Part shown: positions 2,362 to 34,100 of the stretch, in pieces
Layout of the letters: each line of letters begins with the position of its first letter
Numbering within the stretch: position 1 is the first letter of the stretch
Assembly (NCBI RefSeq): GCF_032444005.1
Contig: NC_091283.1
Span: 270,878,001-270,942,000 of the forward strand
Source of the DNA: Ranitomeya imitator
Lineage: Eukaryota
Direction: 5' to 3'
DNA: 64,000 nucleotides
Program-made: the position numbers and the translations under genes
The notes under the pieces: generated by a model
Told to the model about the DNA's origin: nothing
The model's input: the letters and a program-made list of their open reading frames with translations, nothing else
Database searches by the model: none

Positions 2362-2436
2362 CTGTGACGGGGGCGGTCTCTTCCCCCTCAGAGCCCCCGC
2401 TGACCCCTTCGCCAGATTCGGGTACTTCATTCTCAT
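2362..2436 (-). CDS. Linker exon of Tc1-HTH paralog B (DENEVPESGEGVSGGSEGEETAPVT)
   Basis: Acceptor atctttatatctag|at, donor acag|gtacga. 75 nt, phase 1-1. It mirrors the 66-nt exon at 18421-18486. Confidence 0.65.
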
Positions 2437-2472
2437 CTAGATATAAAGATAAATGTGGGATGAAGCAGCAAG

Positions 2473-3346
2473 ACAGCTCTGTATGTGACCGACGGCAGAA
2501 GTGTGAGCACAGCTCTGTATGTGACCGACAGAAGAAGTGTGAGCGCAGCTCTGTATGTGACCGACGGCAGAAGTGTGAGCGCAGCTGTGTATGTGACCGA
2601 CGGCAGAAGTGTGAGCGCAGCTGTGTATGTGACCGACGGCAGAAGTGTGAGCGCAGCTCTGTATGTGACCGACGGCAGAAGTGTGAGCACAGCTCTGTAT
2701 GTGACCGACGGCAGAAGTGTGAGCACAGCTCTGTATGTGACCGACGGCAGAAGTGTGAGCGCAGCTCTGTATGTGACCGACGGCAGAAGTGTGAGCGCAG
2801 CTGTGTATGTGACCGACGGCAGAAGTGTGAGCGCAGCTGTGTATGTGACCGACGGCAGAAGTGTGAGCGCAGCTGTGTATGTGACCGACGGCAGAAGTGT
2901 GAGCACAGCTCTGTATGTGACCGACGGCAGAAGTGTGAGCATAGCTCTGTATGTGACCGACGGCAGAAGTGTGAGCGCAGCTGTGTATGTGACCGACGGC
3001 AGAAGTGTGAGCGTAGCTGTGTATGTGACCGACGGCAGAAGTGTGAGCGCAGCTGTGTATGCGACCGACGGCAGAAGTGTGAGCGCAGCTGTGTATGTGA
3101 CCGACGGCAGAAGTGTGAGCGCAGCTGTGTATGTGACCGACGGCAGAAGTGTGAGCGCAGCTGTGTATGTGACCGACGGCAGAAATGTGAGCGCAGCTGT
3201 GTATGTGACCGACGGCAGAAGTGTGAGCGCAGCTGTGTATGTGACCGACGGCAGAAGTGTGAGCGCAGCTGTGTATGTGACCGACGGCAGAAGTGCGAGC
3301 ACAGCTGGGTATGAGACCGACGGCAGAAGTGCGAGCGCAGCTCTGT
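2473..3346. repeat. 36-bp minisatellite (gcagctgtgtatgtgaccgacggcagaagtgtgagc), about 24 copies, intronic
   Basis: Visible period; lies between the exons at 2362-2436 and 3427-3649. Confidence 0.95.
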
Positions 3347-3426
3347 GTGTGGACTTTTCCTATCCGCTGTAGGGCTAGTCAGTGATGTGTGTGGCGGGGC
3401 AGCGGCCATCATCCAGTCCTCGTTAC

Positions 3427-3649
3427 CTCTTCTCCGGAGCGTGCAGAGGATGCTGGCGATCTTGGTTGGCCGCCCGCTGCGGGGACGGGAGGAGACGGTG
3501 TTGAAGGTCTTCCACTTGTAGATGATCTGCCGGACGGTGGAGCGGTGAAGCTCGCACACTTTACTGATGGTCTTGTAACCCTTCCCGGCCTCGTGGGCCG
3601 CCACCACCTTCCTCCGCACCTCGTCAGAGATCTCCTTGGACCGGGGCAT
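3427..3649 (-). CDS. Tc1 transposase-derived HTH exon, paralog B
   Basis: MPRSKEISDEVRRKVVAAHEAGKGYKTISKVCELHRSTVRQIIYKWKTFNTVSSRPRSGRPTKIASILCTLRRR, then phase-1 donor agag|gtaacg. An acceptor (ctcccctccag|gaaccATG) lies just upstream. Confidence 0.75.
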
Positions 3650-3935: not shown

Positions 3936-3939
3936 TGGT

Positions 3940-9360: not shown

Positions 9361-12300
9361 TTGTACTGTGGGAACATCATACTGTGTGAGGGGGATGGTA
9401 CTGAGGGGACATCATACCGTGTTTGAGGGGGATTGTACTGAGGGGACATCATACCGTGTGTGAGGGGGATTGTACTGAGGGGACATCATACCGTGTGTGA
9501 GGAGGATTGTACTGAGGGGACATCATACCGTGTGTGAGGAGGATTGTACTGAGGGGACATCATACCATATGTGAGGGGGATTGTACTGAGGGGACATCAC
9601 ACCGTGTGTGAGGGATTGTACTGATGGGACATCATACCGTGTGTGAGGGGGATGGTACTGAGGGGACATCACACCGTGTGTGAGGTATTGTACTGAGGGG
9701 ACATCATACCGTGTGTGAGGGGGATTGTACTGAGGGGACATCATACCGTGTGTGAGGGGGATTGTACTGAGGGGACATCATACCGTGTGTGAGGGGGATT
9801 GTACTGAGGGGACATCATACCGTGTGTGAGGGGGATTGTACTGAGGGGACATCATACCGTGTGTGAGGGGGATTGTACTGAGGGGACATCATACCGTGTG
9901 TGAGGAGGATTGTACTGAGGGGACATCATACCGTGTGTGAAGGGGATTGTACTGAGGGGACATCATACCGTGTGTGAGGGGGATGGTACTGAGGGGACAT
10001 CATACCGTGTGTGAGGGGGATGGTACTGAGGGGACATCATACCGTGTGTGAGGGGGATGGTACTGAGGGGACATCATACCGTGTGTGGGGGGATTGTACT
10101 GAGGGGACATCATACCGTGTGTGAGGGGGATTGTACTGAGGGGACATCATACCGTGTGTGAGGGATTGTACTGAGGGGACATCATACCGTGTGTGAGGGG
10201 GATTGTACTGAGGGGACATCATACCGTGTGTGAGGGGGATTGTACTGAGGGGACATCATACCGTGTGTGAGGGGGATTGTACTGAGGGGACATCATACCG
10301 TGTGTGAGGGGGATTGTACTGAGGGGACATCATACCGTGTGTGAGGGGGATTGTACTGAGGGGACATCATACCGTGTGTGAGGGGGATTGTACTGAGGGG
10401 ACATCATACCGTGTGTGAGGGGGATTGTACTGAGGGGACATCATACCGTGTGTGAGGGGGATGGTACTGAGGGGACATCATACCGTGTGTGAAGGGGATT
10501 GTACTGAGGGGACATCATACCGTGAGGATTGTACTGAGGGGACATCATACCATGTGTGAGGGGGATTGTACTGAGGGGACATCATACCGTGTGTGAGGGG
10601 GATGGTACTGAGGGGACATCATACCGTATGTGAGGGATTGTACTGAGGGGACATCATACCGTATGTGAGGGATTGTACTGAGGGGACATCATACCGTGTG
10701 TGAGGGGGATTGTACTGAGGGGACATCATACCGTGTGTGAGGATTGTACTGAGGGGACATCATACCGTGTGTGAGGGGGATTGTACTGAGGGGACATCAT
10801 ACCGTGTGTGAGGGGGATTGTACTGAGGGGACATCATACCGTGTGTGAGGGGGATGGTACTGAGGGGACATCATACCGTGTGTGAGGGATTGTACTGAGG
10901 GGATATCATACCGTGTGTGAGGGGGATTGTACTGAGGGGACATCATACCGTGTGTGAGGGGGATGGTACTGAGGGGACATCATACCGTATGTGAGGGATT
11001 GTACTGAGGGGACATCATACCGTATGTGAGGGATTGTACTGAGGGGACATCATACCGTGTGTGAGGGGGATTGTACTGAGGGGACATCATACCGTGTGTG
11101 AGGATTGTACTGAGGGGACATCATACCGTGTGTGAGGGGGATTGTACTGAGGGGACATCATACCGTGTGTGAGGGGGATTGTACTGAGGGGACATCATAC
11201 CGTGTGTGAGGGGGATGGTACTGAGGGGACATCATACCGTGTGTGAGGGATTGTACTGAGGGGATATCATACCGTGTGTGAGGGGGATTGTACTGAGGGG
11301 ACATCATACCGTGTGTGAGGAGGATTGTACTGAGGGGACATCATACCGTGTGTGAGGGGGATTGTACTGAGGGGACATCATACCGTGTGTGAGGGGGATT
11401 GTACTGAGGGGACATCATACCGTGTGTGAGGAGGATTGTACTGAGGGGACATCATACCGTGTGTGAGGGGGATTGTACTGAGGGGACATCATACCGTGTG
11501 TGAGGGGGATTGTACTGAGGGGACATCATACCGTGTGTGAGGGGGATTGTACTGAGGGGACATGATACCGTGTGTGAGGGATTGTACTGAGGGGACATCA
11601 TACCGTGTGTGAGGGGGATTGTACTGAGGGGACATCATACCGTGTGTGAGGGGGATTGTACGGAGGGGACATCATACCGTGCGTGAGGGGGATTGTACTG
11701 AGGGGACATCATACCGTGCGTGAGGAGGATTGTACTGAGGGGACATCATACCGTGTGTGAGGGGGATTGTACTGAGGGGACATCATACCGTGTGTGAGGG
11801 GGATTGTACTGAGGGGACATCATACCGTGTGTGAGGGGGATGGTACTGAGGGGACATCATACCGTGTGTGAGGGATTGTACTGAGGGGACATCATACCGT
11901 GTGTGAGGGGGATTGTACTGAGGGGACATCATACCGTGCGTGAGGAGGATTGTACTGAGGGGACATCATACCGTGCGTGAGGGGGATTGTACTGAGGGGA
12001 CATCATACCGTGCGTGAGGGGGATTGTACTGAGGGGACATCATACCGTGTGTGAGGAGGATTGTACTGAGGGGACATCATACCGTGTGTGAGGGGGATTG
12101 TACTGAGGGGACATCATACCGTGTGTGAGGGGGATTGTACTGAGGGGACATCATACCGTGTGTGAGGGGGATGGTACTGAGGGGACATCATACCGTGTGT
12201 GAGGGATTGTACTGAGGGGACATCATACCGTGTGTGAGGGGGATTGTACTGAGGGAACATCATACCGTGTGTGAGGAGGATTGTACTGAGGGGACATCGT

Positions 12301-14785: not shown

Positions 14786-16018
14786 TAATAATAATAATAA
14801 TAATAATAATTTTATTTATATAGCGCCAACATATTCCGCAGCGCTTTACAAATTATAGAGGGGACTTGTACAGACAATAAACATTACAGCATAACAGAAA
14901 TACAGTTCAAAACAGATACCAGGAGGAGTGAGGGCCCTGCTCGCAAGCTTACAAACTATGGGGAAAAGGGGAGACACGAGAGGTGGATGGTAACAATTGC
15001 TTTAGTTATTCGGACCAGCTATAGTGTAAGGCTCAGGTGTTCATGTAAAGCTGCATGAACCAGTTACCTGCCTAAGTATGTAGCAGTACAGACACAGAGG
15101 GCTAATACTGCATAAAGTGTATGAGAACATGATGCGAGGAACCTTTTTTTTTTTATTATAAATAGGCCACACAGGGATCGTTAGGTTAATGCATTGAGGC
15201 GGTAGGCCAGTCTGAACAAATGAGTTTTTAGGGCACGCTTAAAACTGTGGGGATTGGGGATTAATCGTATTAACCTAGGTAGTGCATTCCAAAGAATCGG
15301 CGCAGCACGTGTAAAGTCTTGGAGACGGGAGTGGGAGGTTCTGATTATTGAGGATGCTAACCTGAGGTCATTAGCGGAGCGGAGGGCACGGGTAGGGTGG
15401 TAGACTGATACCAGGGAGGAGATGTAGGGTGGTGCTGAGCCATGGAGTGCTTTGTGGATGAGGGTAGTAGTTTTGTACTGGATTCTGGAGTGGATGGGTA
15501 GCCAGTGTAATGACTGGCACAGGGTAGAGGCATCGGTGTAACGGTTGGTGAGGAATATGATCCTGGCTGCAGCATTCAGGACAGATTGGAGCGGGGAGAG
15601 TTTTGCAAGAGGGAGACCGATTAGTAGAGAGTTACAATAGTCCAGACGAGAATGAATAAGTGAAACAGTCAGAGTTTTTGCAGAGTCGAAATTAAGAAAA
15701 GGGCGAATTCTAGAAATGTTTTTGAGATGCAGGTAAGAAGAGCGAGCCAGTGATCGGATGTAGGGGGTGAATGAAAGGTCAGAATCAAGGATGACCCCAA
15801 GGCAGCGGGCATGTTGCTTTGGAGTAATGGTGGAACCGCACACGGAGATGGCAATGTCAGGCAAAGGTAGGTTAGTAGAGGGAGAGAACACGAGGAGTTC
15901 AGTTTTTGACAGGTTTAGTTTCAGATAGAGGGAGGACATGATGTTAGAGACAGCGGTAAGACAATCACTGGTGTTTTCTAAAAAGGTCGGTGTGATATCG
16001 GGAGCAGAAGTGTATAGA
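14786..16018 (-). mobile_element. 5'-truncated L2 (CR1-superfamily) LINE
   Basis: ORF 15181-15939 has LKLNLSKTE, RCLGVILDSDLSF, SRLDYCNSLL, LHWLPI and FKRALKTHLF. It ends in a (TAT)n tail, with apparent TSD gtgcaa at 14780-14785 and 16019-16024. Confidence 0.9.
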
Positions 16019-16899
16019 GTGCAAGAACATTATGCAGTGAAGGCCATGAAATGGAAATCATAGTGGGTGAGAACACTAAGGGGCTTCAGTAGGGTGTAAT
16101 AAGTGCCCAGCACCCGTCTCTCTCAGCGTCTTTAGAAGTTGCTAGGTCTGGTCTGTGACTGCGCCCATGTGCTGTGATAGCACTTTTGGGGTCCTGTGAT
16201 TTCTGACTCCCCAGCTCAGGAACATTATTACTCTGCACGGACACTGGTATCATGTGCGGGGGCACTGGTCATAGCGGTAATATTAGTAACAGACCCCAGA
16301 TGGGAAACATGACAGAGCCGGCGTGGGCCTGTGTGCTGTCAAATCCCCAGGCTGAAATTCAGCCCCAGTCCAGCCCCGTCTGGAAGTATATCATCGACCA
16401 CATTGGGTACAGCGGTTGTGTGGGGGTCCGCTCAGTAACTCCCTGTTACCCAGGAAGAGCTGGTCCCGTGAGGAGTCACTGCACCCACTCAGAATTCTCA
16501 CGGCAGTGCATACACTGCACAGATGCCATCACAGATGGCGCCCCCTACAGAACAAACATATGCTCAAGTGCAGGGTTTTGTGCATTTTTATAACTTTCTA
16601 CAAGATAAGGAATAAAAAAATTCATATGATAATTTTTAAAAAATCCCTCCTGTAGCCTCCGCCCTCGGTTAGTGTTCCCATTAGAGTTACTTCCTGCAAA
16701 AAAAAAAAAAAAAAAAGGATAAATAGAAAATAAGATCCTGGATGGAGAAGCGAAGATGAAAGCTGCGGCCAGGAGAGGAGTCGAGGGCTGCAGCCAGGAG
16801 CAAAGAGTTGCGACGAGGAGGGAAAAGCTGTGGCCAAGACCCGAGAGCTGTGTTCAGGAGAGAAGAACTGCGGCCAGGATAGGAGCAGATGGCCGTGTT

Positions 16900-17400
16900 C
16901 TGGAGAGATGATCTGCGGGCAGGAGAGGAGCCGAGGACTGTGTTCGTGAGAGAAGAGCTGCGGCCAGGAGAGGAGCCGAGGACTGTGTTCAGGAGAGAAG
17001 AGCTGCGGCCAGGAGAGGAGCCAAGGGCTGTGTTCAGGAGAGAAGAGCTTCAGCCAGGAGAGGAGCCAAGGGCTGTGTTCAGGAGAGAAGAGCTTCAGCC
17101 AGGAGAGGAGCTGAGGACTGTGTTCAGGAGAGAAGAGCTTCAGCCAGGAGAGGAGCCGAGGACTGTGTTCAGGAGAGAAGAGCTTCAGCCAGGAGAGGAG
17201 CTGAGGACTGTGTTCAGGAGAGAAGAGCTGCGGCCAGGAGAGGAGCCGAGGACTGTGTTCAGGAGAGAAGAGCTTCTGCCAGGAGAGGAGCCGAGGACTG
17301 TGTTCAGGAGAGAAGAGCTTCAGCCAGGAGAGGAGCCGAGGACTGTGTTAAGAAGAGAAGAGCTGCGGCCAGGAGAGGAGGTGAGGGCTGTGGCCAGAAG
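16900..17400. repeat. 45-bp purine-rich minisatellite
   Basis: Unit translates as FRREELRPGEEPRTV (15 codons); about 11 copies. Confidence 0.9.
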
Positions 17401-17584
17401 AGGAGCCGAGGGCTGTGGACAGGAGAGAATCAGGACACCCCTAGAGCAGGGGTCATCTACCAAATGTACAGAAGTGTCCCCTCCATCCGTTAGGGTTCAG
17501 CAGTCACAGCGTTTAGCAGGCCACCCGCTGACAGCCGATCCCACGTGATCACTTCCTCCCAGCATGCCATGGGGCAGGTGGCGC

Positions 17585-17943
17585 TCAGCAGCCATGTTTT
17601 CTTTTCCGGTGTGCTCTCAGGCCGGCGGCGGTCTGGAAGGCTCTCCCGCACTCCTCGCACTGGTGCAGCGTCTTGTCCAGGTGCTGCGCCTGGTGACTTT
17701 CCAGATCGGTTTCTGTGGTGCAGCAGGTTCCGCAGATCTCGCAGCAGAGCATTACCTCCATGTGACGCTCTGCAGGTGGCGGGGCTGGTCCCAGCTCGCG
17801 GTTACAGTTCAGCTTTTCTTTCCGCCTTATTCTTTTTGTCGTCTTCCTTGTGACCGTGGAAACATCAGGGAGCGCAAGAGTCATGGAGGCTTTGTCCTCC
17901 CCCGCCGCTGCGACGCCGCCGCAGTCTGCACCATGGTCCGTAC
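17585..17943 (-). CDS. Terminal exon with two C2H2 zinc fingers
   Basis: ORF 17585-17950 contains CEICGTCCTTETDLESHQAQH and HQCEECGRAFQTAAGLRAHRKRKH; the acceptor ends at 17944. Confidence 0.8.
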
Positions 17944-19986
17944 CTGACAAACAAGGACCGCGACATCATCAGTATCCTGCAGCTCGAGGGGCGACAGGAG
18001 CAGCCATGGCAGACGCACAATTAAAGGGGTTGTCCCACAAACAAAACTACATTTTAATCAGCAAATCCTCAAAAATTCAGCAGTTCATCAATTGGATGTT
18101 TTGAGCATTTTTTTTAAACAGTCTTTGCTGTATCCCATGTATCCCGCTGGCCATGTAGAGATGCTGCAGGGTCGTGTACACCGCTTCTGGCGAGGGGGAG
18201 TCATAAGTGACCACAGTATTATAGGTGACACGGGCGGGGCACCCTCCAGCTGATCGCCAGGAGCGGAGTACGCGACCATGAGCTGCAGCATCTGCCGGGG
18301 CACAGCGCACAGGGAAGGTCAGCAGCAGCTTCATCGCCACAAAAAACACCAGTGAAGGAACTTCTTAGATTACCATCATCTATTGAATGGTCCCACTAAC
18401 ATTCTGCACAGATGACTTACCTGAGACTCGCGAGTCCTCGCTCTTCGCACTGACGCTCGCCTCTTCTATTTTTATGCTCTCATTTTCTAGATTAAAAGAA
18501 AAAAGGACACAAATAATAGAACATCACAGATGAAACTCCAGGAGGGTAGCAGAGTATTAATGCTACACAAACACTCTCTACACCCGAGCGCTCTCTGCTC
18601 TCGTACCAGACACCTGCGTGCTCTCCGCTCTCATACCTGAGACCAGCGTGCTCTCCGCTTTCGTACCAGACACCCGAGCGCTCTCTGCTCTCGTACTAGA
18701 CACCCGCGTGTTCTCTGCTCTCGTACTAGACACCCACGTGTTCTCCGCTCTCGTACCTGACACCCGTGTGCTCTCCTATCTCGTACCTGACACCAGCGTG
18801 CTCTCCGCTCTCGTACCAGACACCCGAGCGCTCTCTGCTCTCCTACTAGACACCCGAGCGCTCTCTGCTCTCGTACCTGACACCCGTGTGCTCTCTGCTC
18901 TCGTACCTGACACCCGTGTGCTCTCTGCTCTCGTACCTGACACCCGTGTGCTCTCCGCTCTCATACCTGACACCCGAGCGCTCTCTGCTCTCGTACCTGA
19001 CACCCGAGCGCTCTCTGCTCTCGTACCTGACACCCGTGTGCTCTCTGCTCTCGTACCTGACACCCGTGTGCTCTCTGCTCTCGTACCTGACACCCGTGTG
19101 CTCTCCGCTCTCATACCTGACACCCGAGCGCTCTCTGCTCTCGTACCTGACACCCGTGTGCTCTCTGCTCTCGTACCTGACACCCGAGCGCTCTCTGCTC
19201 TCGTACCTGACACTCGTGTGCTCTCTGCTCTCGTACCTGACAACTGCGTGCTCTCCGCTCTCATACCTGAGACCTGCGTGCTCTCCGCTCTCATACCTGA
19301 CACCCGTGTGCTCTCCTATCTCGTACCTGACACCAGCGTGCTCTCCGCTCTCGTACCAGACACCCGAGCGCTCTCTGCTCTCGTACCTGACACCCGAGCG
19401 CTCTCTGCTCTCGTACTAGACACCCGCGTGTTCTCTGCTCTCGTACTAGACACCCACGTGTTCTCCGCTCTCGTACCTGACACCAGCGTGCTCTCCGCTC
19501 TCGTACCTGACACCAGCGTGCTCTCCGCTCTCGTACCTGACACCAGCGTGCTCTCCGCTCTCGTACCAGACACCCGAGCGCTCTCTGCTCTCGTACTAGA
19601 CACCTGCGTGTTCTCCGCTCTCGTACCCGACACCTGTGTGCTCTCCTTCCCGTTGACTCTGACACCTTCTGTTGTAATTTTCTGTCCCTGACAACCTGTG
19701 GGTAATAGGACAGTGACATGAGTAGCCAATCAGCGGCCGTCCCTGGAGCAGCGGCAGTCTCCTTACCTCTCCGGAGGTGGGGCAGGACGGTGGCCAACTT
19801 GATGGGGCGCCCGCTCCGGGGAAGTGTGGAGATGGTGTTGAAGGCCTTCCACTTGTAGATGATCTTCCTCACAGTGGAGTGGTGCAGCTCACACATCTTA
19901 CTGATGGTTTTGTAGCCTTTCCCAGCTTCGTGAGCCTCCACCACCCTCCTCCGCACATCCTCCGAGAAGTCCTTGGACCGGGGCAT
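17585..19986 (-). CDS. Tc1-HTH + 2xC2H2 zinc-finger fusion gene (paralog A), predicted 214 aa; exons 19986-19767, 18486-18421, 17943-17585
   Basis: All GT-AG junctions are phase 1 (agag|gtaagg; atctag|aa; tcag|gtaagt; tttgtcag|gt). 220+66+359=645 nt is open to the stop. Fingers are CEICG...HQAQH and CEECG...HRKRKH. Confidence 0.7.
18590..19645. repeat. 30-bp minisatellite (ctcgtacctgacacccgtgtgctctctgct), intronic
   Basis: Visible period, about 35 copies. Confidence 0.95.
19767..19986 (-). CDS. Tc1 transposase-derived HTH exon, paralog A
   Basis: MPRSKDFSEDVRRRVVEAHEAGKGYKTISKMCELHHSTVRKIIYKWKAFNTISTLPRSGRPIKLATVLPHLRR, then a donor. There is no TIR or DDE domain around it. Confidence 0.78.
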
Positions 19987-20049
19987 GATTCCCGGCTGCA
20001 CCGAGAAGAGCAGCACCGGCGGCGTCACCGCCGCTACACTGAGTCCACG

Positions 20050-20345
20050 GCTCGAAGACTCAGAGCGGCGACTAGACGATCAAAGCTCAGCAGTCATGTG
20101 ACGTGCGCATAACGCGCTGCGAACCCAACTGTGAAGCTAAGCAGTCACATGACCGGCGTACACAGGCTCAGAAAAGATTCACCAATCAGTGTCGTTTACG
20201 TCACCGGACTGTCAGCCAATAGACGGGAACCATAACCAGAGCGCTAGTTGGTGTGTCTCACACACTGCAGCAATGTCCTCAGCTCGGCGGCCATCTTATT
20301 GTAGCCGCGCCACAGACTGGGCTTTGTCTGTTGCTATGGAAGCAA
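20050..20345. promoter_or_regulatory. Putative promoter of paralog A
   Basis: CpG-rich, with E-box/CRE-like tcatgtgacg, gtcacatgac and ttacgtcac, two CCAAT boxes, YY1-like gcggccatctt and X-box-like gttgctatggaa. Confidence 0.55.
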
Positions 20346-22368
20346 GGGTGCGCACAGAGCTAGAACCGCAGGGTGCGCGCAGAGCTAGAACCGCAGGGTG
20401 CGCGCAGAGACAGAACCGCAGGGTGCGCGCAGAGACAGAACCGCAGGGTGCGCGCAGAGACAGAACCGCAGGGTGCGCGCAGAGCTAGAACCGCAGGGTG
20501 CGCGCAGAGACAGGACCGCAGGGTGCGCGCAGAGCTAGAACCGCAGGGTGCGCGCAGAGACAGGACCGCAGGGTGCGCGCAGAGACAGAACCGAAGGGTG
20601 CGCGCAGAGACAGAACCGAAGGGTGCGCGCAGAGACAGAACCGCAGGGTGCGCGCAGAGACAGAACCGCAGGGTGCGCGCAGAGACAGAACCGCAGGGTG
20701 CGCGCAGAGACAGAACCGCAGGGTGTGCGCAGAGACAGGACCGCAGGGTGCGCGCAGAGACAGGACCGCAGGGTGCGCTCAGAGACAGGACCGCAGGGTG
20801 CGCGCAGAGACAGAACCGCAGGGTGCGCGCAGAGACAGAACCGCAGAGCGCGCAGAGACAGAACCGCAGGGTGCGCGCAGAGACAGAACCGCAGGGTGCG
20901 CGCAGAGACAGAACCGCAGGGTGCATAGAGACAGAACCGCAGGGTGCGCACAGAGACAGAACCGCAGGGTGCGCACAGAGACAGAACCGCAGGGTGCGCA
21001 CAGAGACAGAACCGCAGGGTGCGCACAGAGACAGAACCGCAGGGTGCGCACAGAGACAGAACCGCAGGGTGCGCACAGAGACAGACCGCAGGGTGCGCAC
21101 AGAGACAGAACCGCAGAGCGCGCAGAGACAGAACCGCAGGGTGCGCGCAGAGACAGAACCGCAGGGTGCGCGCAGAGACAGAACCGCAGGGTGCGCGCAG
21201 AGACAGAACCGCAGGGTGCATGCAGAGACAGAACTGCAGGGTGCATAGAGACAGAACCGCAGGGTGCGCACAGAGACAGAACCGCAGGGTGCGCAAAGAG
21301 ATAGAACCGAAGGGTGCGCACAGAGACAGACCGCAGGGTGCGCACAGAGACAGAACCGCAGGGTGCGTAGAGACAGAACCGCAGGGTGCGCACAGAGACA
21401 GAACCGCAGGGTGCGCACAGAGACAGAACCGCAGGGTGCGTACAGAGACAGAATGCAGGGTGCGCAAAGAGACAGAACCGCAGAGTGCGCAGAGACAGAA
21501 CCGCAGGGTGCGCACAGAGACAGACCGCAGGGTGCGTACAGAGACAGAACCGCAGGGTGCGCACAGAGAGAACCGCAGGGTGCGCAAAGAGACAGAACCG
21601 CAAAGTGCGCACAGAGACAGAACCGCAGGGTGCGTACAGAGACAGAACAGCAGGGAGCGTACAGAGACAGAACCGCAGAGTTTGCACAGAGATAGATAGA
21701 ACCGCAGGGTGCTTACAGAGACAGAACCACATGGTGCGTACAGAGACAGAACGGCAGAGTGCGTACAGACAGAACCGCAGGGTGCGCGCACAGAGACAGA
21801 ACCGCAGGGTGCGCACAGAGACAGAACCGCAGGGTGCATACAGAGACAGAACCGCAGGGTGCGTACAGAGACAGAACCGCAGGGTGCGTACAGAGACAGA
21901 ACCGCAGGGTGCACAAAGAGACAGAACCGCAGGGTGCGTACAGAGACAGAACCGCAGGGTGCGTACAGAGACAGAACCGCAGGGTGCGTACAGAGACAGA
22001 ACCGCAGGGTGCGTACAGAGACAGAACCGCAGGGTGCGCAAAGAGACAGAACCGCAGGGTGCGCAAAGAGACAGAACCGCAGGGTGCGCACAGGGACAGA
22101 ACCGCAGGGTGCGCACAGGGACAGAACCGCAGGGTGCGCACAGAGACAGAACCGCAGGGTGCGCACAGAGACAGAACCGCAGGGTGCGCACAGAGACAGA
22201 ACCGCAGGGTGCGCACAGAGATAGAACCGCAGAGTGCGCACAGAGATAGAACCGCAGAGTGCGCACAGAGACAGAACCGCAGAGTGCGCAAAGAGATAGA
22301 ACCGCAGGGTGCGCACAGAGACAGAACCGCAGAGTGCGCACAGAGACAGAACCGCAGGGTGCGTACAT
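20346..22368. repeat. 25-bp minisatellite (cgcgcagagacagaaccgcagggtg), about 80 copies
   Basis: Visible period. Confidence 0.95.
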
Positions 22369-22369
22369 A

Positions 22370-23860
22370 GGAGGTCACTCACAATGTGCGGGGGCTTCTC
22401 ATCCATGGAGGGGGTCACTCACAATGTGTGGGGGCTTCTCATCCATGGAGGGGATCACTCACAATGTGCGGGGGCTTCTCATCCATGGAGGTGGTCACTC
22501 ACAATGTGTGGGGGCTGCTCATTCATGGAGGGGATCACTCACAATGTGTGGGGGCTTCTCATCCATGGAGGTGGTCACTCACAATGTGTGGGGGCTTCTC
22601 ATTTATGGAGGGGATCACTCACAATGTGTGGGGGCTTCTCATCCATGGAGGGGGTCACTCACAATGTGCTGGGGCTTCTCATCCATGTAGGGGATCACTC
22701 ACAATGTGCGGGGGCTTCTCATCCATGGAGGGGATCACTCACAATGTGCAGGGGCTTCTCATCCATGGAGGGGTCACTCACAATGTGCTGGGGCTTCTCA
22801 TCCATGGAGGGGATCACTCACAATGTGCGGAGGCTTCTCATCCATGGAGGGGGTCACTCACAATGTGTGGGGGCTTCTCATCCATGGAGGGGGTCACTCA
22901 CATTGTGTTATGGCTTCTCATCCATGGAGGGGTCACTCACAATGTGCGGGAGATTCTCATCCATGGAGGGGGATCACTCACAATGTGTGGGGGCTTCTCA
23001 TCCATGGAGGGGTCACTCACAATGTGCTGGGGCTTGTCATCCATGGAGGGGATCACTCACAATGTGCGGAGGCTTCTCATCCATGGAGGGGGTCACTCAC
23101 AATGTGTGGGGGCTTCTCATCCATGGAGGGGGTCACTCACATTGTGTTATGGCTTCTCATCCATGGAGGGGGTCATTCACAATGTGTGGGGGCTTCTCAT
23201 CCATGGAGGGGGTCATTCACAATGTGTGGGGGCTTCTCATCCATGGAGGGGTCACTCACAATGTGTGGATATTCTCATCCATGGAGGGGTCACTCACAAT
23301 GTGTGGATATTCTCATCCATGGAGGGGATCACTCACAATGTGCATGGGCTTCTCATCCATGGAGAGGATCACTCACAATGTGTGGGGGCTTCTCATCCAT
23401 GGAGGGGTCACTCACAATGTGTGGATATTCTCATCCATGGAGGGGTCACTCACAATGTGTGGATATTCTCATCCATGGAGAGGATCACTCACAATGTGCA
23501 TGGGCTTCTCATCCATGGAGGGGATCACTCACAATATGCTGGGGCTTCTCATCCATGGAGGGGATCACTCACAGTGTGTTGGGGCTTCTCATCCATGGAG
23601 GGGGTCACTCACAATGTGTGGGGGCTTCTCATCCATGGAGGGGATCACTCAATGTGCGGGGGCTTCTCATTCATGGAGTGGATCACTCACAATGTGCTGG
23701 GGCTTCTCATCCATGGAGGGGATCACTCACAATGTGTGGGGGCTTCTCATCCATGGAGGGGATCACTCACAATATGCTGGGGCTTCTCATCCATGGAGGG
23801 GTCACTCACAGTGTGTTGGGGCTTCTCATGCATGGAGGTGTCACTCACAGTTTTGGGGCT
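22370..23860. repeat. 39-40-bp minisatellite (cactcacaatgtgtgggggcttctcatccatggagggggt)
   Basis: Visible period; directly abuts the 25-bp array. Confidence 0.95.
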
Positions 23861-24401: not shown

Positions 24402-25821
24402 ATGGTGTCCGCTGATCTGAGAGACGTGCTGAGCTGCTCCATCTGCCAGAACATGTACACAGACCCCATCACCCTGAGCTGCGGACACAACTTCTGCCGG
24501 GACTGCATCAATCACAAACTGGATTCACAAAAGTCCAAAGTTTACTTCTGTCCTGACTGCGGAGCAGAGTTCAGAGATCGCTCCAAGCTCTGCAAGAAGA
24601 TAGTCCTGGCCAAAGTAATAGATTGTCTCCCGTCTCTTCCAGAAGAGCAGTCTCCGCAACATGTCTTCTCAGAACCCACTATCAACCTGGATCACAGGAC
24701 ATGCTCAGTCCACAACAAGATCCTGGAATATTACTGCTTGGATGATTCCACCGGTGTCTGCATTAGCTGCTTTGTAGCTGGACACCACCAAGGACACAAC
24801 GTGAATTTCCTGCTTGAAGCCTTGGAAATGAAGAAGCAAAAGCTGGAAAAAGTTCTGATGGCGAGAGAGAAAGCCAACAGAGAAATTCAACATCTCGCGC
24901 AATGCAGAATAGGGGTGGAAGACAAAGCGGCAGAGATGGAAAAGAGAGTTAACTCCTTGTTCCGAGAACTCAGGAAGAAGCTGAATCACTTAGAAATGAC
25001 AGCTCTGGAGGTTATCTCCAAGCAAGAGAAGAAGGTCCTTCAAAGAATCGAGGACCTGATCAACCACCTCCAAGTCAAGAGGCAAGAATTGTCCAGGAAG
25101 ATCCGCGACATTGAAGAGATGTGCAAGACGAGTGATCATCTGACCGTCCTACACAAGGACTTCTTACGTGACTTAGGATAAGGAAACGTTGAGGACTGGG
25201 CCCCTGATGAGGTCTACAACATCAAGGACATTGACGACCATCAGATCTCTTTTTTTCTACAAACGGGTTTATCGGACATCAGCGCAGGCACAAACGTGTG
25301 GATCCATATGCTGAAACCTGTAGACTTCCTACTGGATGTGGACACAGTCTCTAACAACGTCACTATGTCCAGGGACCAGAGAGCAATTCAACTCTGGTAT
25401 AAACAACACAATCGTCCTGAAATGGCCGAGAGATTTGACTATTTTCAAGCTCTAAGCAGTAGAGTCTTCTCGTCAGGACGACATTACTGGGTGGTGGAAA
25501 TCGGCAAGTCAGGAAATCTGGGGATTGGAGTGTTATCCCAGTATAGACAGGAAAGGATATGTGTACATCGGGGAGAACGAGAAGTCCTGGTGCCTCAAAT
25601 ACGTGTCTTACCAGTGGTACGTGGAACATGACAGAAAAGCCACTCTGCTTCCCGACAAGGTCTCCTCCAATAGAATAGGGATCTATCTGGATTACGATGC
25701 CGGCCAGCTCTCCTATGATCTCACTGATCCCATCAGGTACTTGACTACCTTGAAGGCCACCTTCACTGAGCCCCTGCACGCTGCCTTTATGGTAATGGTG
25801 GAAGGATGTTTCAAAATTTAA
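24402..25821 (+). pseudogene. Intronless TRIM gene (RING, B-box, coiled coil, PRY/SPRY; TRIM25/39-like), disrupted
   Basis: RING CSIC...CGHNFCRDC...CPDC; B-box CSVH...YYC...CISC...H..H; B30.2 LLDVDT...FSSGRHYWVVE...LDYDAGQLS. In-frame TAA at 25179-25181 and a frameshift near 25530. Confidence 0.85.
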
Positions 25822-26149: not shown

Positions 26150-27075
26150 TGTTCTGTTCTAAAGACCAGTCTACCTTACTGTTCCAGAAATTCCAACTTC
26201 TCCTGGTAAAGCCGTGTTTTATTAATTTGGAGGTCACTTAGGGTCATTGTCTGCTGAAAGGTGAATTCCTCTTTATCTTCAACTTTTGTTGTAAAATTGA
26301 CTGATATTTGTTCTGTCCATAATCCCCTCCCCGTTGTCTAAAGCACCAGTTGTAGCTGCCGAAAACCAATGCTGCTCCCACCATGCCTCACTGTGGGGAT
26401 GGTGATCTTCTGGTGCTGACCAGTGTCCACTTTGCACCTTTCGGAAGTAATGTTCCCCCTCGGTTTCAGCAGACAGAACACGTTTCCTGCTTCTGGCCAA
26501 CTTGATGGAGGTTTTGGCAGAGGTAAGGCTTCCATCTTGACCGTGACCCCATAAGCAGGACATATGAAGAATAGGGGAGGTTGTGGTCAGATGCAGGACA
26601 CAGCAAGTACCGGCCAGAAATCCCTGCAGCTCCTTTAATGTTGCTGTTGACCTCCAGCCCCGATCTTCTCGTCTTTTCATCAATTTCTGAAAGACGTCCA
26701 GCTCTGGGTAAGATCACTGTGGTGCCAAATTTCAGCCCCTTGCTGACAACGTCCTCACAACGTCCATGGTAGAGCTAATGTCTGGAAATGTTTAAGCACC
26801 TTATCCTGACAGCTTTCCACAATGAGATCCTTTTGCTGTGTTGTCAGCTGTTTACGGTCAGGAAAATCCTAGAGCAGCGACACTTTCTCTGGAGTTAATC
26901 AGCCGCTGTAAATGATGGCGGCCGAGCACTGACTTATGTAACATGGGGGAAACGTGATCGGCTGATTCTGGGCTCAACCACAGCCCTTATTATATGAGGG
27001 TGCACACACTTATGCAACCACAATAGTGTAGTTTTATTTTCCCTGCAAAATGTCATTTTATGAAGGGTGTGTAGA
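26150..27075 (-). mobile_element. Highly decayed Tc1 transposon remnant
   Basis: Fragments STATLKELQGFLA...TTSPILHMSCLWG, TIPTVRHGGSSI and GEGIMD lie in shifting frames; Tc1-like terminus near 27000-27030. Edges are approximate. Confidence 0.6.
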
Positions 27076-30425: not shown

Positions 30426-31198
30426 TCAGACCTCTTCATGGTGGAATGCCCATTTGTGTTTCATGAAGTGGGACTTGTGAGCGAAGCGTTTCCCGCACAG
30501 GCGGCACATGATTGGCTTCTCGTGGTCGTGGATCTTCTCGTGTTTCGCCAGCTGGGACTTGGTGTCGAATCGATGGTCGCACTTGCTGCAGGAGATGGTC
30601 TTGCCTTTGGTGTGCCTCCTCTGGTGAACCAGCAGACTGCACTTATGGCCGAATTTCCTTCCGCACTGGTCACACTCGAAGGGTTTTTCTCCGGTGTGCG
30701 CCCGCTGGTGGATGATGAACTGGGACTTGTAGTCATACTGGATGCCGCAGATGGTGCAGGCGTAGCGTTTCACCGCGTGGTTCTCCGCCCGGTGCTTGAT
30801 CAACAAGGACTTGGTGACAAACACTTGGCCGCAGTCCTCGCACTCCACGTCCACCTCCTCCACCTCGTAACTCTTTATGTGCTTCTGGGACTTGAGGTGC
30901 CTCCTGAAGGCCAGTCTCTTGGGGAAGGTCATGTCACACTTCTTGCAGTGGTAGATTCGGCTCTTTCCACGGAGTAAATGGTATTTCTTCAGTTTGGAGC
31001 CTCCGTTGGGTGCAGCGTCACCGGACGAGCCTGGAAGAATGGAGAAGTCCTCATCCCCTAGCATCGAGTCCCCGCCATCCTCGTCTTCTGAAAGCAGCTC
31101 GGACTCGCTGTACTCGCTGACCACCCCGTCCGGCAGCCATTCCGGGGAGTTCGGCTGCTTTGTGGTCGCTTTGCCTTCTTCCTCGCTGCCAGATTCAT
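30426..31198 (-). CDS. Terminal exon with six C2H2 fingers
   Basis: ORF 30426-31259; acceptor tctctcccatcacag|at at 31199; acidic region followed by six CxxC...H..H units. Confidence 0.9.
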
Positions 31199-34100
31199 CT
31201 GTGATGGGAGAGAAAAGGGAAGCCATGATTTTTACACATTTATCGTTTTCCAACCACAAGATGGCGTCTGACGTGGTCAGTGGAGCCTACCTGAGTCTGT
31301 ATCGTCCGCCATTTCTGTGACGGCGTCCTCCTCCTCCACGGACACATCGCCGTACAGCTCCCTGTGAGACTTAATATAGTCCCACTCCTCGGTGGAGAAA
31401 TACATGGCGATGTCGTCACACTTCACCGGCACCTGCCACATAAGAAGTCAGGGTGACCGCTGGTGAGACCACCACGGCACGTATGAGGGGCACTGTCACA
31501 CTCACCTCCTTAGTATTGTCGGGGGGGTCCTCGCGATCAGCAAGCAGCCATTTCTATACAAGAGGACACTGATGTTAGTCACAAAAGTATCTGTTAACAA
31601 TCATTACCCTGCAGGAGCGAAGACCCCAAAAACCCACGGATGGCTGTAAATGGTTAATGGAGGCGGAAGGTGGACACGCACAAGTCCTGACATGGACGGA
31701 AATCATGGCACGGTGTAAACGTGTCCCGGTCACAGGACAGAGGAGAACACGACCACGGGCAAACTTACGTCTCCGGTCAGAAGGGCCACGATCTCCAGGA
31801 TCTGATGCAGGAACTTCTGTGTCACCATCTTGGAGGCTTCTTCAATAAACGGAGTGTTCAGCAAATGCTGCATGAGCGAGACCTGAGGAGAGAAAACAGG
31901 GCGTCCGTATAGGCTGGGATTACAGGGACGGGGTGCAGCGTCCATATACACTTGGATTAAGGGGACGCGGTGCAGAGTTCGTATACACTTAGATTACAGG
32001 GACGGGATCAGCGTCCATACGGCCGTGGGTTATAGTCAGGGGGTGCAGCGTCCATATGGCCAAGGGTTATAGTCAGGGGGTGCAGCGTCCATATGGCCAA
32101 GGGTTATAGTCAGGGGGTACAGCGTCTATATAGCCGTGTATATAGTCTGGGGGTGCAGCATCCATGTGGCCGTGTATATAGTCCGGGGGTGCAGCGTCCA
32201 TATGGCCGTGTATATAGTCAGGGGGTGCAGCGTCCATATAGCCATGTATATAGTCCGGGGGTGCAGCGTCCATATGGCCGTGTGCATAGTCAGGGGGTGC
32301 AGCGCCTATATGGTCTTGGCTTATAGTCAGGGGGTGCAGCGTCTATATGGCCGTGTATATAGACCGGGGGTGCAGCGTCCATATGGCCATGTATATAGTG
32401 TGGGGGTGCAGCGTCCATATAGCCATGTATATAGTCCGGGGGTGCAGCGTCCATATGGCCAAGGGTTATAGTCCGGGGGTGCAGCGTCCATATGGCCGTG
32501 TATATAGTCCGGGTGTACAGCGTCCATATGGCAGTGTATATAGTCCGGGGGTGCAGCGTCCATATGGCCGTGTATATAGTCCGGGGGTGCAGCGTCCATA
32601 TGGCCGTGTATATAGTCCGGGTGTACAGCGTCCATATGGCAGTGTATATAGTCCGGGGGTGCAGCGTCCATATGGCCGTGTATATAGTCCGGGGGTGCAG
32701 CGTCCATATGGCCGTGTATATAGTCGGGGTGCAGCATCTATAAGCAGGAGGTATAGCCGACACGGAGACTTACCATCACTTCCTCCATTGCAAAGAACAA
32801 CCTGCTGTCTTTTACGGGGACGTTCCTGGGTAACTGGGAATTGTCTGACGTTGACCCCTGCAGTAAGTCGGACCATTTCTGCTCTTCCGCTTCCTGCGTT
32901 GGAGCCACTGTTTGGGTGCCCCCCGTAGTCATGTCTTTGGGCGGGACCGCAGGACCAAACCGATAGAGGTAGTCAGGTCTGACGCTCCAGGAGTCATCCC
33001 CACGGTTCAGTAAGAACTCGGAGCATTGGACGGCCTTGTCGGACGTGCACGGCCGAGCCTTCAAAGGAGTGAAGAACCTTCCAAACCGCGTGGATGTTGA
33101 CGCTTCGCGGACAAGAATGGGTCTGGTGAGAAGGCCAATGCTGCGGACCCCCCAGTAAGGGTCAGTGCTGGTGGAGACATGCCTCAGTTTGTGGCTCTTA
33201 TCGGCGTACACAGTGACTGCTTCTCTTGATCCACCGCAGCTTGGATCGGACTGGAACGGGACCTCCACCTCCTCCTCCTTCACCAGGTTTCTTTGCAGAC
33301 CAGGAAATATGGTTGGCACAGCGTCAGGCTTGAGCTTCACCTCCGTCCCGCGGATTGTGTAATTAGTTGGGGAAAAGTGATCAGCACACATCCCAAACCT
33401 CTCCGAAGGGCTCATGTCCAGAACCTGCCGGGCAGCGAGGTCCAGATCACCAAAGTTCTGCCCGGTCTGCCGAAGCCACAGCCGTACCATAGAGAAGTTA
33501 CTGGGAAACACGTGAACTGCCACGTTAGGGTTCTGGAGCTCCGTGAAGTTCGGGCAGTCTGTGACAATACATCTCAGTGTGACGTCACCCTGCGGAGGAA
33601 ACACCGCCATCAGAGAAGAGCGTGTACTATACAGACACCCCAGAGCAAGCGAAAAACACCGGACACAAGAAAAGACCGTGAACGTACAAGGAAGGAAAGA
33701 AAGAATACCATGTACAGTTTGTCTGCAAGTCACAAACATGGCCGAATGCCGAGCACTGACGCTATAATACTGCCCATATGTACAAGAACTACTATAATAC
33801 TGCCCCCTATGTACAATATAACTACTATAATACTGCCCCCTATGTACAAGAATATAACTGCTATAATACTGCTCCTATGTGCAAGAATATAACTACTATA
33901 ATACTGCATCTTATGTGGAAGAATATAACTACTATAATACTGCTCCTATGTACAAGAATATAACTACGATAATACTGCTCCCTATGTACAAGAATATAAC
34001 TACTATAATACTGCCCCTATGTACAAGAATATAACTACTATAATACTGCCCCTTATGTACAAGAATATAACTACTATAATACTGCTCCTATGTACAAGAA

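What the first reader, a model, noticed from the sequence alone, without database searches (positions are those of the whole stretch)
17585..19986. Tc1 transposase HTH spliced to two C2H2 fingers: candidate transposase-capture transcription factor
Seen: a 73-aa Tc1 N-terminal DNA-binding segment ends at the GRP linker, gains a short non-transposase tail (ATVLPHLRR) and stops at a strong donor. Two phase-compatible exons then give an open 214-aa HTH-linker(IKIEE, SUMO-like)-2xC2H2 protein. There are no TIRs or DDE domain, third codon positions are GC-rich, and a promoter-like region lies upstream, unlike the decayed Tc1 relics at 3.8 and 26.5 kb. Known: exon capture of transposase DNA-binding domains has created vertebrate TFs. 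Inference: this is a domesticated, possibly undescribed frog TF family that may recognise Tc1 TIR sequences.
Basis: partly seen in the sequence, partly recalled or inferred. Interest (0 to 1): 0.85.

Follow-up and report, generated by a model that had tools for sequence, protein, structure and literature searches.

The report
Frog gene: Tc1 transposase HTH plus zinc fingers
This is a real poison-frog gene whose first coding exon is the DNA-binding helix-turn-helix of an old Tc1 "jumping gene", spliced to two zinc fingers. It is conserved under purifying selection across many neobatrachian frog families, so it is a domesticated transposase gene that no paper I could search describes.

Summary
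On the minus strand, 19986-19767 encodes a Sleeping-Beauty/Tc1-type PAI helix-turn-helix (Pfam HTH_SB, 6e-19). Canonical splice sites join it to exons ending in two C2H2 fingers (17943-17585). No DDE domain, RED subdomain or terminal inverted repeats are present.

With that exon the window reproduces two Ranitomeya imitator database proteins exactly: 237 aa and 267 aa. These carry misleading automatic names ("ZNF82 homolog", "ZKSCAN1-like").

The same architecture, with the same two fingers, occurs in Dendrobatidae, Aromobatidae, Leptodactylidae, Eleutherodactylidae, Hylidae, Rhinodermatidae, Bufonidae and Myobatrachidae. The upstream THAP-zinc-finger neighbour is shared in two species. I found no member in ranoid, pipid or alytid frogs.

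dN/dS is 0.10-0.25 for the HTH and 0.10-0.31 for the fingers, in every pair tested. A tandem paralog's first two exons lie at 3649-2362.

Verdict: a host-transposase fusion gene, so a new member of a known kind. It most likely encodes a small nuclear DNA-binding regulator. Binding to Tc1 repeats is plausible but untested. RNA junction evidence could not be obtained here.

The parts
19987..20300 (-). 5' UTR and putative core promoter of gene A. The conserved block at about 20180-20295 holds AAGATGGCCGCC, two ATTGG (inverted CCAAT) boxes and TGACGTAA. An in-frame stop lies about 96 nt upstream of the ATG, with no ATG between.
   Evidence: CpG o/e 1.19 at 20000-20199. Block aligned with E. coqui upstream DNA. 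Upstream frame read. The last ~7 nt before the ATG align with the Tc1 5' UTR of L004. Promoter function is inferred, not shown.
19767..19986 (-). Coding exon 1 of gene A (220 nt, ends in phase 1). It holds the transposase start codon, the Tc1/Sleeping-Beauty PAI helix-turn-helix, the GRP(I/T)K linker, a short tail and the donor AG|GTAAGG.
   Evidence: Pfam HTH_SB 6e-19. PDB 2m8e/6urs match residues 1-51. AlphaFold gives three helices, 9-20, 25-32 and 36-51; 10-residue block means of pLDDT over residues 11-50 are 84-95. dN/dS 0.10-0.25.
19627..19695 (-). An alternative donor at 19537 extends it by 90 nt (three minisatellite units) in isoform X1.
   Evidence: Spliced translation is identical to P0003 and, with the extension, to P0004. 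Homologous residues occur in Leptodactylus, Hyla, Bufo and Rhinoderma proteins.
18580..19645 (-). Intronic 30-bp minisatellite (35.5 copies), built from the 3' end of exon 1b plus its donor. Every unit re-creates G|GTACGA and reads in frame as GTRAESxxVS.
   Evidence: Tandem Repeats Finder, sequence, open repeat ORFs, isoform X1 use.
18421..18486 (-). Exon 2 (66 nt, ENESIKIEEASVSAKSEDSRVS): an acidic, serine-rich linker with a psi-K-x-E motif.
   Evidence: Predicted disordered (pLDDT below 50). The motif is conserved only in dendrobatid A copies.
17585..17943 (-). Terminal coding exon: linker, basic patch RKTTKRIRRKEK (NLS-like, inferred), two C2H2 fingers (C-x2-C-x12-H-x3-H and C-x2-C-x12-H-x4-H), and the stop codon at 17587-17585.
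   Evidence: zf-C2H2 2e-7. Two beta-beta-alpha units; 10-residue block means of pLDDT over residues 181-237 are 75-89. dN/dS 0.10-0.31. The gene call in the database spans exactly 2402 nt.
2362..3649 (-). First two coding exons of tandem paralog B: HTH exon 3649-3427 and linker exon 2436-2362. Its terminal exon lies beyond the window start.
   Evidence: tblastn 98.6% to R. variabilis B protein P0008. Canonical junctions and open frame. Its HTH is 74% identical to A at protein level, dN/dS 0.19.

Best explanation
This is a host-transposase fusion gene of Ranitomeya imitator (gene A of a tandem pair).

**Origin (inferred).** A Tc1-family transposon landed at the 5' side of a small zinc-finger gene. 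This happened in an ancestor of hyloid and myobatrachid frogs, after that lineage had split from ranoid frogs. Only about 200 bp of the transposon survive, from ~7 nt before the transposase ATG to about codon 65. That piece is the PAI helix-turn-helix plus the GRPxK minor-groove linker. A GT donor about 8 codons further on splices it to host exons.

**Product.** A 237-267 aa protein. It has a folded three-helix HTH, then about 120 disordered acidic/serine-rich residues with a basic NLS-like patch, then two C2H2 fingers. It has no catalytic domain and no recognisable effector domain (no KRAB, SCAN or BTB).

**Most likely mechanism (inferred).** It is a small nuclear DNA-binding regulator. The transposase-derived HTH supplies the sequence recognition. 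It would act by occupying sites or by recruiting partners through the linker or the fingers. Its targets may include the direct repeats of the parental Tc1 lineage.

**Shown here:** anatomy, exact identity with database gene models, family distribution, shared neighbours, purifying selection on both folded modules, and loss of all transposition hallmarks.

**Not shown:** DNA binding, targets, nuclear localisation and RNA-level junctions.
For: - **Domains and fold:**
- **Gene models:** splice sites are canonical and the window reproduces P0003 and P0004 exactly. The database gene call has the same 2402-nt span.
- **Not a transposon:** Tc1 transposases match only residues 1-65/76; there is no DDE, RED or TIR.
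- **Family distribution:** the same HTH plus the same two fingers occur in Dendrobates, two Ranitomeya species, Phyllobates, Anomaloglossus, Leptodactylus, Engystomops, Eleutherodactylus, Hyla, Rhinoderma, two Bufo species and Pseudophryne.
- **Single origin:** all family HTHs fall on one side of a branch, apart from transposases and other fusions. Pseudophryne is sister to the hyloids (SH-aLRT 84).
- **Shared neighbours:** the terminal exon of the THAP-zinc-finger gene lying upstream on the same strand in Leptodactylus and Engystomops maps at 80-82% amino-acid identity to window 31217-30429.
- **Selection:** Nei-Gojobori dN/dS is 0.10-0.25 for HTH codons 1-63 (10 pairs) and 0.10-0.31 for the 52-54 finger codons (6 pairs). 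Bootstrap P(pN >= pS) is at most 0.003.
- **Conservation pattern:** residues are invariant in the HTH and fingers, while the linker varies freely.
- **Promoter:** an upstream block is conserved with E. coqui.
Against: - No RNA evidence was accessible; the junctions rest on computed gene models.
- Only the PAI half of the bipartite Tc1 DNA-binding domain remains. By itself it may bind weakly, or act in protein-protein contact.
- The finger positions that usually read bases (-1, 2, 3, 6) are small or acidic: T/T/D/S in finger 1 and T/A/G/A in finger 2. That is atypical for sequence-specific DNA fingers (my reading of the sequences against the textbook C2H2 code). The fingers may therefore bind protein or RNA instead.
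- In both Ranitomeya species the conserved core Phe of finger 1 is Cys.
- There is no effector domain, so 'transcription factor' is an assumption.
- No repeat of the nearest Tc1 lineage lies in the window.
- dS is 0.55-1.5, so some pairs are near saturation.
- Clade support rests on 65 columns.
Confidence: 0.8

Rival explanations
1. It is a transposon-control protein, not a gene regulator. A DNA-binding-domain-only transposase derivative would compete with, or poison, active Tc1 transposase at the element's direct repeats. It would resemble truncated-transposase repressors such as the P-element KP protein. It would do this either by occupying the repeats or by forming dead oligomers through the PAI subdomain.
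For: - The protein keeps exactly the N-terminal transposase module, with no catalytic or effector domain.
- Tc1 relics of the nearest lineage exist in hyloid genomes, for example just 3' of the E. coqui gene (L003:14664-14915).
- Tandem duplication with divergence in the recognition helix (R36H and Q41K in A copies) could reflect tracking of changing transposon families.
- A second, different Tc1 N-terminus is spliced to the same downstream exons in Bufo gargarizans.
Against: - Conservation from Myobatrachidae to Dendrobatidae at low dN/dS fits a stable host function better than an arms race.
- The RED subdomain needed for full repeat recognition is absent.
- No evidence here that the cognate Tc1 lineage is active in these frogs.
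- Nothing was tested experimentally.
- This rival overlaps with the best explanation and does not exclude it.
Confidence: 0.25
2. The HTH exon is a fortuitously spliced transposon relic: a non-functional chimeric transcript or an annotation artefact. The real gene would be only the small zinc-finger protein.
For: Junction evidence is model-based only. Frog genomes are rich in Tc1 fragments. Many unrelated HTH_SB chimeras appear in annotations, some obviously artefactual, such as the Salvator 'omega-amidase' P0017.
Against: - The exon is intact, with the same ATG and donor region, in at least 14 species.
- dN/dS is 0.10-0.25 between copies at corresponding loci.
- Many HTH residues are invariant in all members.
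- No HTH-less version of the finger protein turned up.
- Different annotation sets (XP_ models and GenBank locus-tag models) make the same join.
Confidence: 0.04
3. The protein is an adaptor, not a DNA binder. The PAI HTH serves as an oligomerisation or protein-contact surface, and the two atypical fingers bind protein or RNA.
For: - The base-reading positions of both fingers are small or acidic, and the SAAGL motif is strongly conserved.
- There are only two fingers, joined by a non-TGEKP linker.
- From established knowledge, not tested here: the Sleeping Beauty PAI subdomain also takes part in transposase-transposase contacts.
Against: - The residues conserved across the family include the third (recognition) helix and the GRPxK motif. 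These are the DNA-contacting parts of paired-like domains.
- A basic patch and the basic ends of the finger helices (HRKRKH) fit nucleic-acid binding.
Confidence: 0.12

Closest known systems
Host-transposase fusion (HTF) genes of tetrapods, e.g. KRABINER and other KRAB-transposase fusions (Cosby et al., bioRxiv 10.1101/2020.05.07.082677)
   Same: The transposase DNA-binding domain sits on its own exon and is joined by splicing to host exons. Mobility is lost and the transposase part is under purifying selection. Tc1/mariner is the commonest source superfamily.
   Different: - Here the transposon supplies the N-terminus (its own ATG and a donor), not a downstream acceptor.
- Only the PAI half-domain (~65 aa) is kept, not a full transposase.
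- The partner is a pair of C2H2 fingers, not an effector such as KRAB.
- That survey reports amphibian counts but names only the tropical clawed frog. I found no member of this family in Xenopus or ranoid proteins.
Sleeping Beauty / Tc1 transposase PAI subdomain (PDB 2m8e, 6urs; Pfam PF25787 HTH_SB)
   Same: Direct sequence homology over residues 1-51, and the same three-helix layout.
   Different: No RED subdomain, no nuclear-localisation/DDE region, no flanking inverted repeats.
Paired domain of PAX transcription factors (an old Tc1-like DNA-binding domain turned transcription factor)
   Same: The same kind of event: a paired-like transposase DNA-binding domain reused in a host regulator.
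   Different: PAX keeps both the PAI and RED subdomains. The Pfam PAX match here is only E = 0.048, below the family cut-off. This origin is far younger and restricted to frogs.
SETMAR and POGZ (Tc1/mariner or pogo-derived host proteins)
   Same: Domesticated IS630-Tc1-mariner sequence fused to host domains. POGZ also combines zinc fingers with transposase-derived parts.
   Different: Those retain the catalytic-domain fold and place the transposase at the C-terminus. There is no sequence relationship beyond the superfamily.
Truncated-transposase repressors (e.g. the P-element KP protein)
   Same: An N-terminal DNA-binding part of a transposase without catalysis, which suggests action by competition.
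   Different: Those are encoded by deleted mobile copies. This is a fixed single-locus host gene, shared between species and fused to host exons.
Other HTH_SB chimeras seen in the searches: Discoglossus P0060, Xenopus tropicalis P0111, Hyperolius P0041/P0133, Rana P0040, Esox P0176
   Same: Tc1 HTH joined to other coding sequence, sometimes to zinc fingers.
   Different: Their HTHs fall in other Tc1 clades. Their fingers or partners are unrelated. They appear to be independent events or annotation chimeras.

Membership tests
Host-transposase fusion gene (sensu Cosby et al.) | Transposase-derived domain encoded on an exon distinct from the host-domain exons, in one open reading frame | tested here: met
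   HTH_SB lies on exon 1 and the C2H2 fingers on the terminal exon. The spliced frame is identical to P0003 and P0004.
Host-transposase fusion gene (sensu Cosby et al.) | Immobile: no catalytic domain in use, no terminal inverted repeats, fixed at one locus across species | tested here: met
   No DDE, RED or TIR. The same upstream THAP-zinc-finger neighbour occurs in Leptodactylus and Engystomops.
Host-transposase fusion gene (sensu Cosby et al.) | Purifying selection on the transposase-derived coding part | tested here: met
   dN/dS 0.10-0.25 in all 10 pairs; bootstrap P(pN >= pS) 0 of 1000 replicates.
Host-transposase fusion gene (sensu Cosby et al.) | Fusion transcript observed (RNA evidence for the junctions) | not testable with these tools
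   Only gene models were available. No transcript-derived contig carrying the protein was found.
Autonomous Tc1/mariner transposon | DDE/D catalytic domain, bipartite PAI+RED DNA-binding domain, flanking inverted repeats | tested here: not met
   Only transposase residues 1-65/76 match. No inverted repeats. Nucleotide homology to Tc1 element L004 is limited to L004 positions 353-541.
KRAB / SCAN zinc-finger proteins (the database names 'ZNF82 homolog' and 'ZKSCAN1-like') | KRAB or SCAN domain plus a tandem array of TGEKP-linked fingers | tested here: not met
   Pfam finds only HTH_SB and C2H2 in P0003. There are two fingers joined by LDKTLHQ, not TGEKP. The names are automatic and misleading.
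C2H2 zinc finger | C-x2-4-C-x12-H-x3-5-H spacing with a beta-beta-alpha fold | tested here: met
   Two units with correct spacing. PF00096 E = 2e-7. Predicted beta-beta-alpha units; 10-residue block means of pLDDT over residues 181-237 are 75-89. The core Phe of finger 1 is Cys in both Ranitomeya species.
PAX paired domain | Full 125-aa paired box (PAI + RED) above the Pfam threshold | tested here: not met
   PF00292 E = 0.048, 14 bits against a cut-off of 22, and only profile positions 18-64 match.

The most novel reading that the evidence does not exclude
This is a neobatrachian-specific regulator family, born once from a Tc1 PAI domain in the common ancestor of hyloid and myobatrachid frogs. 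It binds the dispersed inverted/direct repeats of its parental Tc1 lineage genome-wide. A DNA-binding factor and its network of sites would then have arisen together, as shown for bat KRABINER, but with a half-domain and no effector. In poison frogs the tandem paralogs A and B have diverged in the recognition helix (R36H, Q41K), while gene conversion keeps their finger exon identical. That would give two DNA specificities on one shared C-terminal module. The exon-derived minisatellite adds splice-selectable linker repeats.
Probability: 0.3. Interest if true: 0.75.

Novelty: new member of a known kind. Interest (0 to 1): 0.55.

Why it matters
Transposase capture is a recognised route to new vertebrate DNA-binding proteins. 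Amphibians were barely sampled when that was established.

This family adds a clean, old, well-conserved case with unusual anatomy:
- The transposon gives the start codon, the N-terminal half DNA-binding domain and the splice donor.
- The partner is a minimal two-finger module with no effector.
- The family shows tandem duplication with exon-specific gene conversion.
- A second, independent Tc1 capture occurs at the same locus in a toad.

It is a compact test system for three questions. Can a PAI half-domain alone confer target specificity? Do the targets derive from Tc1 repeats, which are very abundant in frog genomes? How do paralogs partition specificity?

It also corrects misleading database names (ZNF82 homolog, ZKSCAN1-like, ZNF367-like, ZNF43-like, ZNF664-like).

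Tried and rejected
1. **Dendrobatid ortholog DNA for dN/dS.** R. variabilis, P. terribilis and R. imitator records were found but gave no DNA (file too large). P0003, P0005 and P0018 were not on record. Selection was therefore measured on Leptodactylus, Engystomops, Eleutherodactylus and the two window paralogs only.
2. **Search for an HTH-less ancestor of the finger exon** (region 117-237 of P0003). It returned only dendrobatoid family members, so the host gene's origin stays open. The 31-33% match to fingers of the neighbouring THAP gene is generic C2H2 similarity.
3. **The exhaustive profile search** was swamped by poly-zinc-finger proteins. Only a handful of rows were informative.
4. **Foldseek against the PDB** with the full model gave only weak zinc-finger matches (best E = 2e-3). 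The long disordered linker dominates the model, so this adds nothing beyond the sequence matches.
5. **Tc1 repeats near the gene.** The direct-repeat core of the nearest Tc1 element (L004) has no match in the window at up to 3 mismatches. blastn finds only the HTH-coding homology.
6. **Literature.** No paper describing this family was found. The Science version of Cosby et al. is not held.
7. **Earlier scan notes by words** returned nothing.
8. **SUMO-site idea.** The motif is present but conserved only among dendrobatid A copies, so it is not a family feature.
Full report
**1. What is in the sequence**

Read on the minus strand, 19986-19767 opens with ATG and encodes 73 residues plus one base.
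- Pfam places residues 1-52 in HTH_SB, the Sleeping Beauty transposase helix-turn-helix, at E = 6e-19 and 68 bits against a cut-off of 43.
- The solved PAI subdomain of Sleeping Beauty (2m8e, 6urs) aligns to residues 1-51, E = 2e-6.
- The exon ends at AG|GTAAGG.
- The last exon holds two C2H2 fingers: C-x2-C-x12-H-x3-H and C-x2-C-x12-H-x4-H, PF00096 E = 2e-7.

**2. The gene model needs one correction**

A protein search returned two Ranitomeya imitator proteins that are 100% identical over the HTH: P0003 (237 aa) and P0004 (267 aa).
- These residues come from a 69-nt exon at 19695-19627 (acceptor CCCACAG|G, donor CGG|GTACGA).
- Splicing 19986-19767 + 19695-19627 + 18486-18421 + 17943-17585 reproduces P0003 exactly.
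- Extending the second exon to 19537 reproduces P0004 exactly.
- The database gene call spans 2402 nt, the same as 19986-17585.
- Exon 1b is ancestral. Homologous residues (G.QNGKITTE...S) occur in Leptodactylus, Hyla, Bufo and Rhinoderma proteins.

The window therefore comes from R. imitator or a near-identical genome (taxonomy).

**3. It is not a transposon**

- Five full-length or near-full-length Tc1 transposases match the window only with their first 65-76 residues, at 19986-19792 and at 3652-3452.
- Nothing beyond chance matches the RED subdomain or the DDE domain near the gene.
- No inverted repeats of 18 nt or more exist in 16000-22000.
- I fetched the Tc1 element L004, which belongs to the transposase group nearest to the family HTH in the tree. 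It has 70-nt outer inverted arms and a perfect 19-nt inner repeat.
- Its nucleotide homology with the frog genes runs only from position 353 (7 nt before its ATG) to 541, about codon 61.
- Its repeat core has no match in the window at up to 3 mismatches.

About 200 bp of transposon survive. The start codon and a few bases of 5' UTR are transposon-derived.

**4. Predicted protein**

AlphaFold with a 16-sequence family alignment gives:
- three helices (9-20, 25-32, 36-51), with 10-residue block means of pLDDT of 84-95 over residues 11-50;
- a long segment (68-168) below pLDDT 50;
- two beta-beta-alpha fingers, with block means of 75-89.

Pfam finds no KRAB, SCAN, BTB or other effector domain. 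The database names 'ZNF82 homolog' and 'ZKSCAN1-like' therefore do not describe it. The linker carries a basic patch (RKTTKRIRRKEK) that most members share and that looks like a nuclear localisation signal; this is an inference.

**5. A conserved family**

Proteins with HTH_SB followed by the same two fingers were found in these taxa:

| Family | Species | Notes |
|---|---|---|
| Dendrobatidae | Dendrobates tinctorius, Ranitomeya variabilis, Phyllobates terribilis | two paralogs each |
| Aromobatidae (family from my own knowledge) | Anomaloglossus baeobatrachus | |
| Leptodactylidae | Leptodactylus fuscus, Engystomops pustulosus | |
| Eleutherodactylidae | Eleutherodactylus coqui | |
| Hylidae | Hyla sarda | |
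| Rhinodermatidae | Rhinoderma darwinii | two HTH copies |
| Bufonidae | Bufo bufo, B. gargarizans | |
| Myobatrachidae | Pseudophryne corroboree | the same two fingers plus further fingers (353 aa) |

- In a 16-sequence alignment, 26 of the first 63 positions and 16 finger positions are invariant, while the linker is free to vary.
- In a tree of 76 HTH segments, all family members fall on one side of a branch (SH-aLRT 84). Pseudophryne is sister to the hyloids, as in the species tree.
- HTH chimeras from Discoglossus, Xenopus, Hyperolius, Rana and fishes fall in other Tc1 clades. That fits one capture for this family and independent events elsewhere. The tree has only 65 columns, so this is modest support.
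- No member was found in ranoid, pipid or alytid proteins. Absence depends on annotation.
- Timing: Pseudophryne is outside Hyloidea, so the capture predates the split between hyloids and myobatrachids. From my own knowledge that split is Cretaceous, on the order of 100 My.

**6. Orthology and selection**

DNA could be fetched for three orthologs: L001 Leptodactylus, L002 Engystomops and L003 E. coqui.
- In L001 and L002 a THAP(+KRAB)+zinc-finger gene lies directly upstream on the same strand. Its terminal exon maps at 82% and 80% amino-acid identity to window 31211/31217-30429, upstream of gene A in the same orientation.
- The E. coqui copy lies inside a neurexophilin gene call. It shares a conserved upstream block with R. 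imitator A.
- Nei-Gojobori estimates for HTH codons 1-63: dN/dS 0.10-0.25 in all ten pairs, including A versus B within the window (0.19).
- For the finger codons: 0.10-0.31 in six pairs.
- Bootstrap P(pN >= pS) is at most 0.003.

The data contradict that outcome.

**7. The tandem paralog and concerted evolution**

An intact second HTH exon lies at 3649-3427, with a linker exon at 2436-2362, both with canonical junctions.
- It is 98.6% identical to the R. variabilis B protein.
- It lies downstream of gene A's terminal exon, so it cannot share that exon. Its own last exon is beyond the window start.
- Across dendrobatids, HTH exons group by paralog: A-A 94-97%, A-B 78-86%.
- The terminal exon groups by species: A-B within a species 93-100%.
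- I read this as gene conversion confined to the 3' exon.
- A copies carry fixed changes in the third helix (R36H, Q41K) relative to B and to all other members.

**8. How it most likely works**

Shown: a selected, two-module protein with no catalytic or effector domain.

Inferred: a nuclear DNA-binding regulator whose specificity comes mainly from the transposase HTH plus the GRPxK motif.

Cautions:
- Only half of the bipartite Tc1 DNA-binding domain is kept.
- The finger positions that normally read bases are T/T/D/S and T/A/G/A. By the textbook C2H2 code that is atypical, so the fingers may bind protein or RNA, or bind DNA non-specifically.
- Binding to Tc1 repeats, as shown for KRABINER and its mariner TIRs, is plausible but wholly untested here.
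- A transposon-repressor role through competition is a live variant.

**9. Comparison with known systems and novelty**

The gene fits the host-transposase fusion class of Cosby et al. on every computable criterion. It differs in four ways:
- the transposon supplies the N-terminus and the donor;
- only ~65 residues are retained;
- the partner is two fingers, not an effector;
- it belongs to frog lineages not named in that survey.

Gene models exist in public databases, but I found no paper on the family. I class it as a new member of a known kind.

**10. Limits**

- No RNA data were available.
- dN/dS comes from four species and short alignments, and some dS values are near 1.
- Absence in other frogs rests on protein databases.
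- The origin of the finger exon is unresolved.

Noticed in passing
window 18580-19645 (minus strand): A 30-bp minisatellite (35.5 copies, 88% matches) is a tandem amplification of the 3' end of exon 1b together with its 5' splice site. Every unit re-creates G|GTACGA and reads in frame as GTRAESxxVS. Isoform X1 (P0004) uses the donor three units downstream. The array could therefore give splice-selectable or length-polymorphic linker repeats.
   Followed up: partly
window 2362-3649 (minus strand): First two exons of tandem paralog B are intact. The HTH exon groups by paralog across dendrobatids, while the terminal finger exon groups by species (A and B 93-100% identical within a species). This points to gene conversion limited to the 3' exon.
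   Followed up: partly
proteins P0174/P0175 (Bufo gargarizans), same contig as P0173: These alternative isoforms start with a different Tc1 N-terminus (PAI+RED, Pfam HTH_Tnp_Tc3_2). It is spliced to the same downstream linker and finger exons. This is either a second, independent Tc1 capture at the same locus or an annotation chimera.
   Followed up: partly
protein P0001 (Rhinoderma darwinii): The family member carries two tandem HTH_SB modules, each followed by the exon-1b-like segment. This suggests duplication of the first two exons.
   Followed up: no
protein P0044 (Pseudophryne corroboree): The myobatrachid member continues past the two family fingers into further fingers, two of them TGEKP-linked. 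Either hyloids lost these fingers, or the model reads into a neighbouring zinc-finger gene.
   Followed up: no
window ~20180-20295 and L003 ~9700-9800: An upstream block is conserved between R. imitator gene A and E. coqui. It holds AAGATGGC(C/T)GCC (YY1-like), two ATTGG boxes and TGA(C/T)GT. It is likely the core promoter.
   Followed up: partly
window 16841-17392, 20345-22367, 22369-23000+: The gene is flanked on both sides by further GC-rich minisatellites with periods of 45, 25 and 40 bp and 12-80 copies. These create long spurious ORFs on both strands.
   Followed up: no
window ~24402-25181 (+ strand): The database calls a 259-aa TRIM-like gene fragment (RING, B-box, TRIM coiled coil) about 4.4 kb upstream of gene A on the opposite strand. 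R. variabilis has a fuller TRIM gene with SPRY at the corresponding place.
   Followed up: no
window 30429-34260 (minus strand): The upstream THAP(+KRAB)+zinc-finger gene has its terminal exon 80-82% identical at protein level to the genes upstream of the Leptodactylus and Engystomops orthologs. Weaker paralogous matches lie at 41299-41661 and 61874-62572.
   Followed up: partly
window 26363-26433 and 3855-3938; L003:14664-14915: Very faint Tc1 transposase relics occur in the window (E = 0.003-0.24). A clearer Tc1 relic of the L004-like lineage lies just 3' of the E. coqui ortholog.
   Followed up: no
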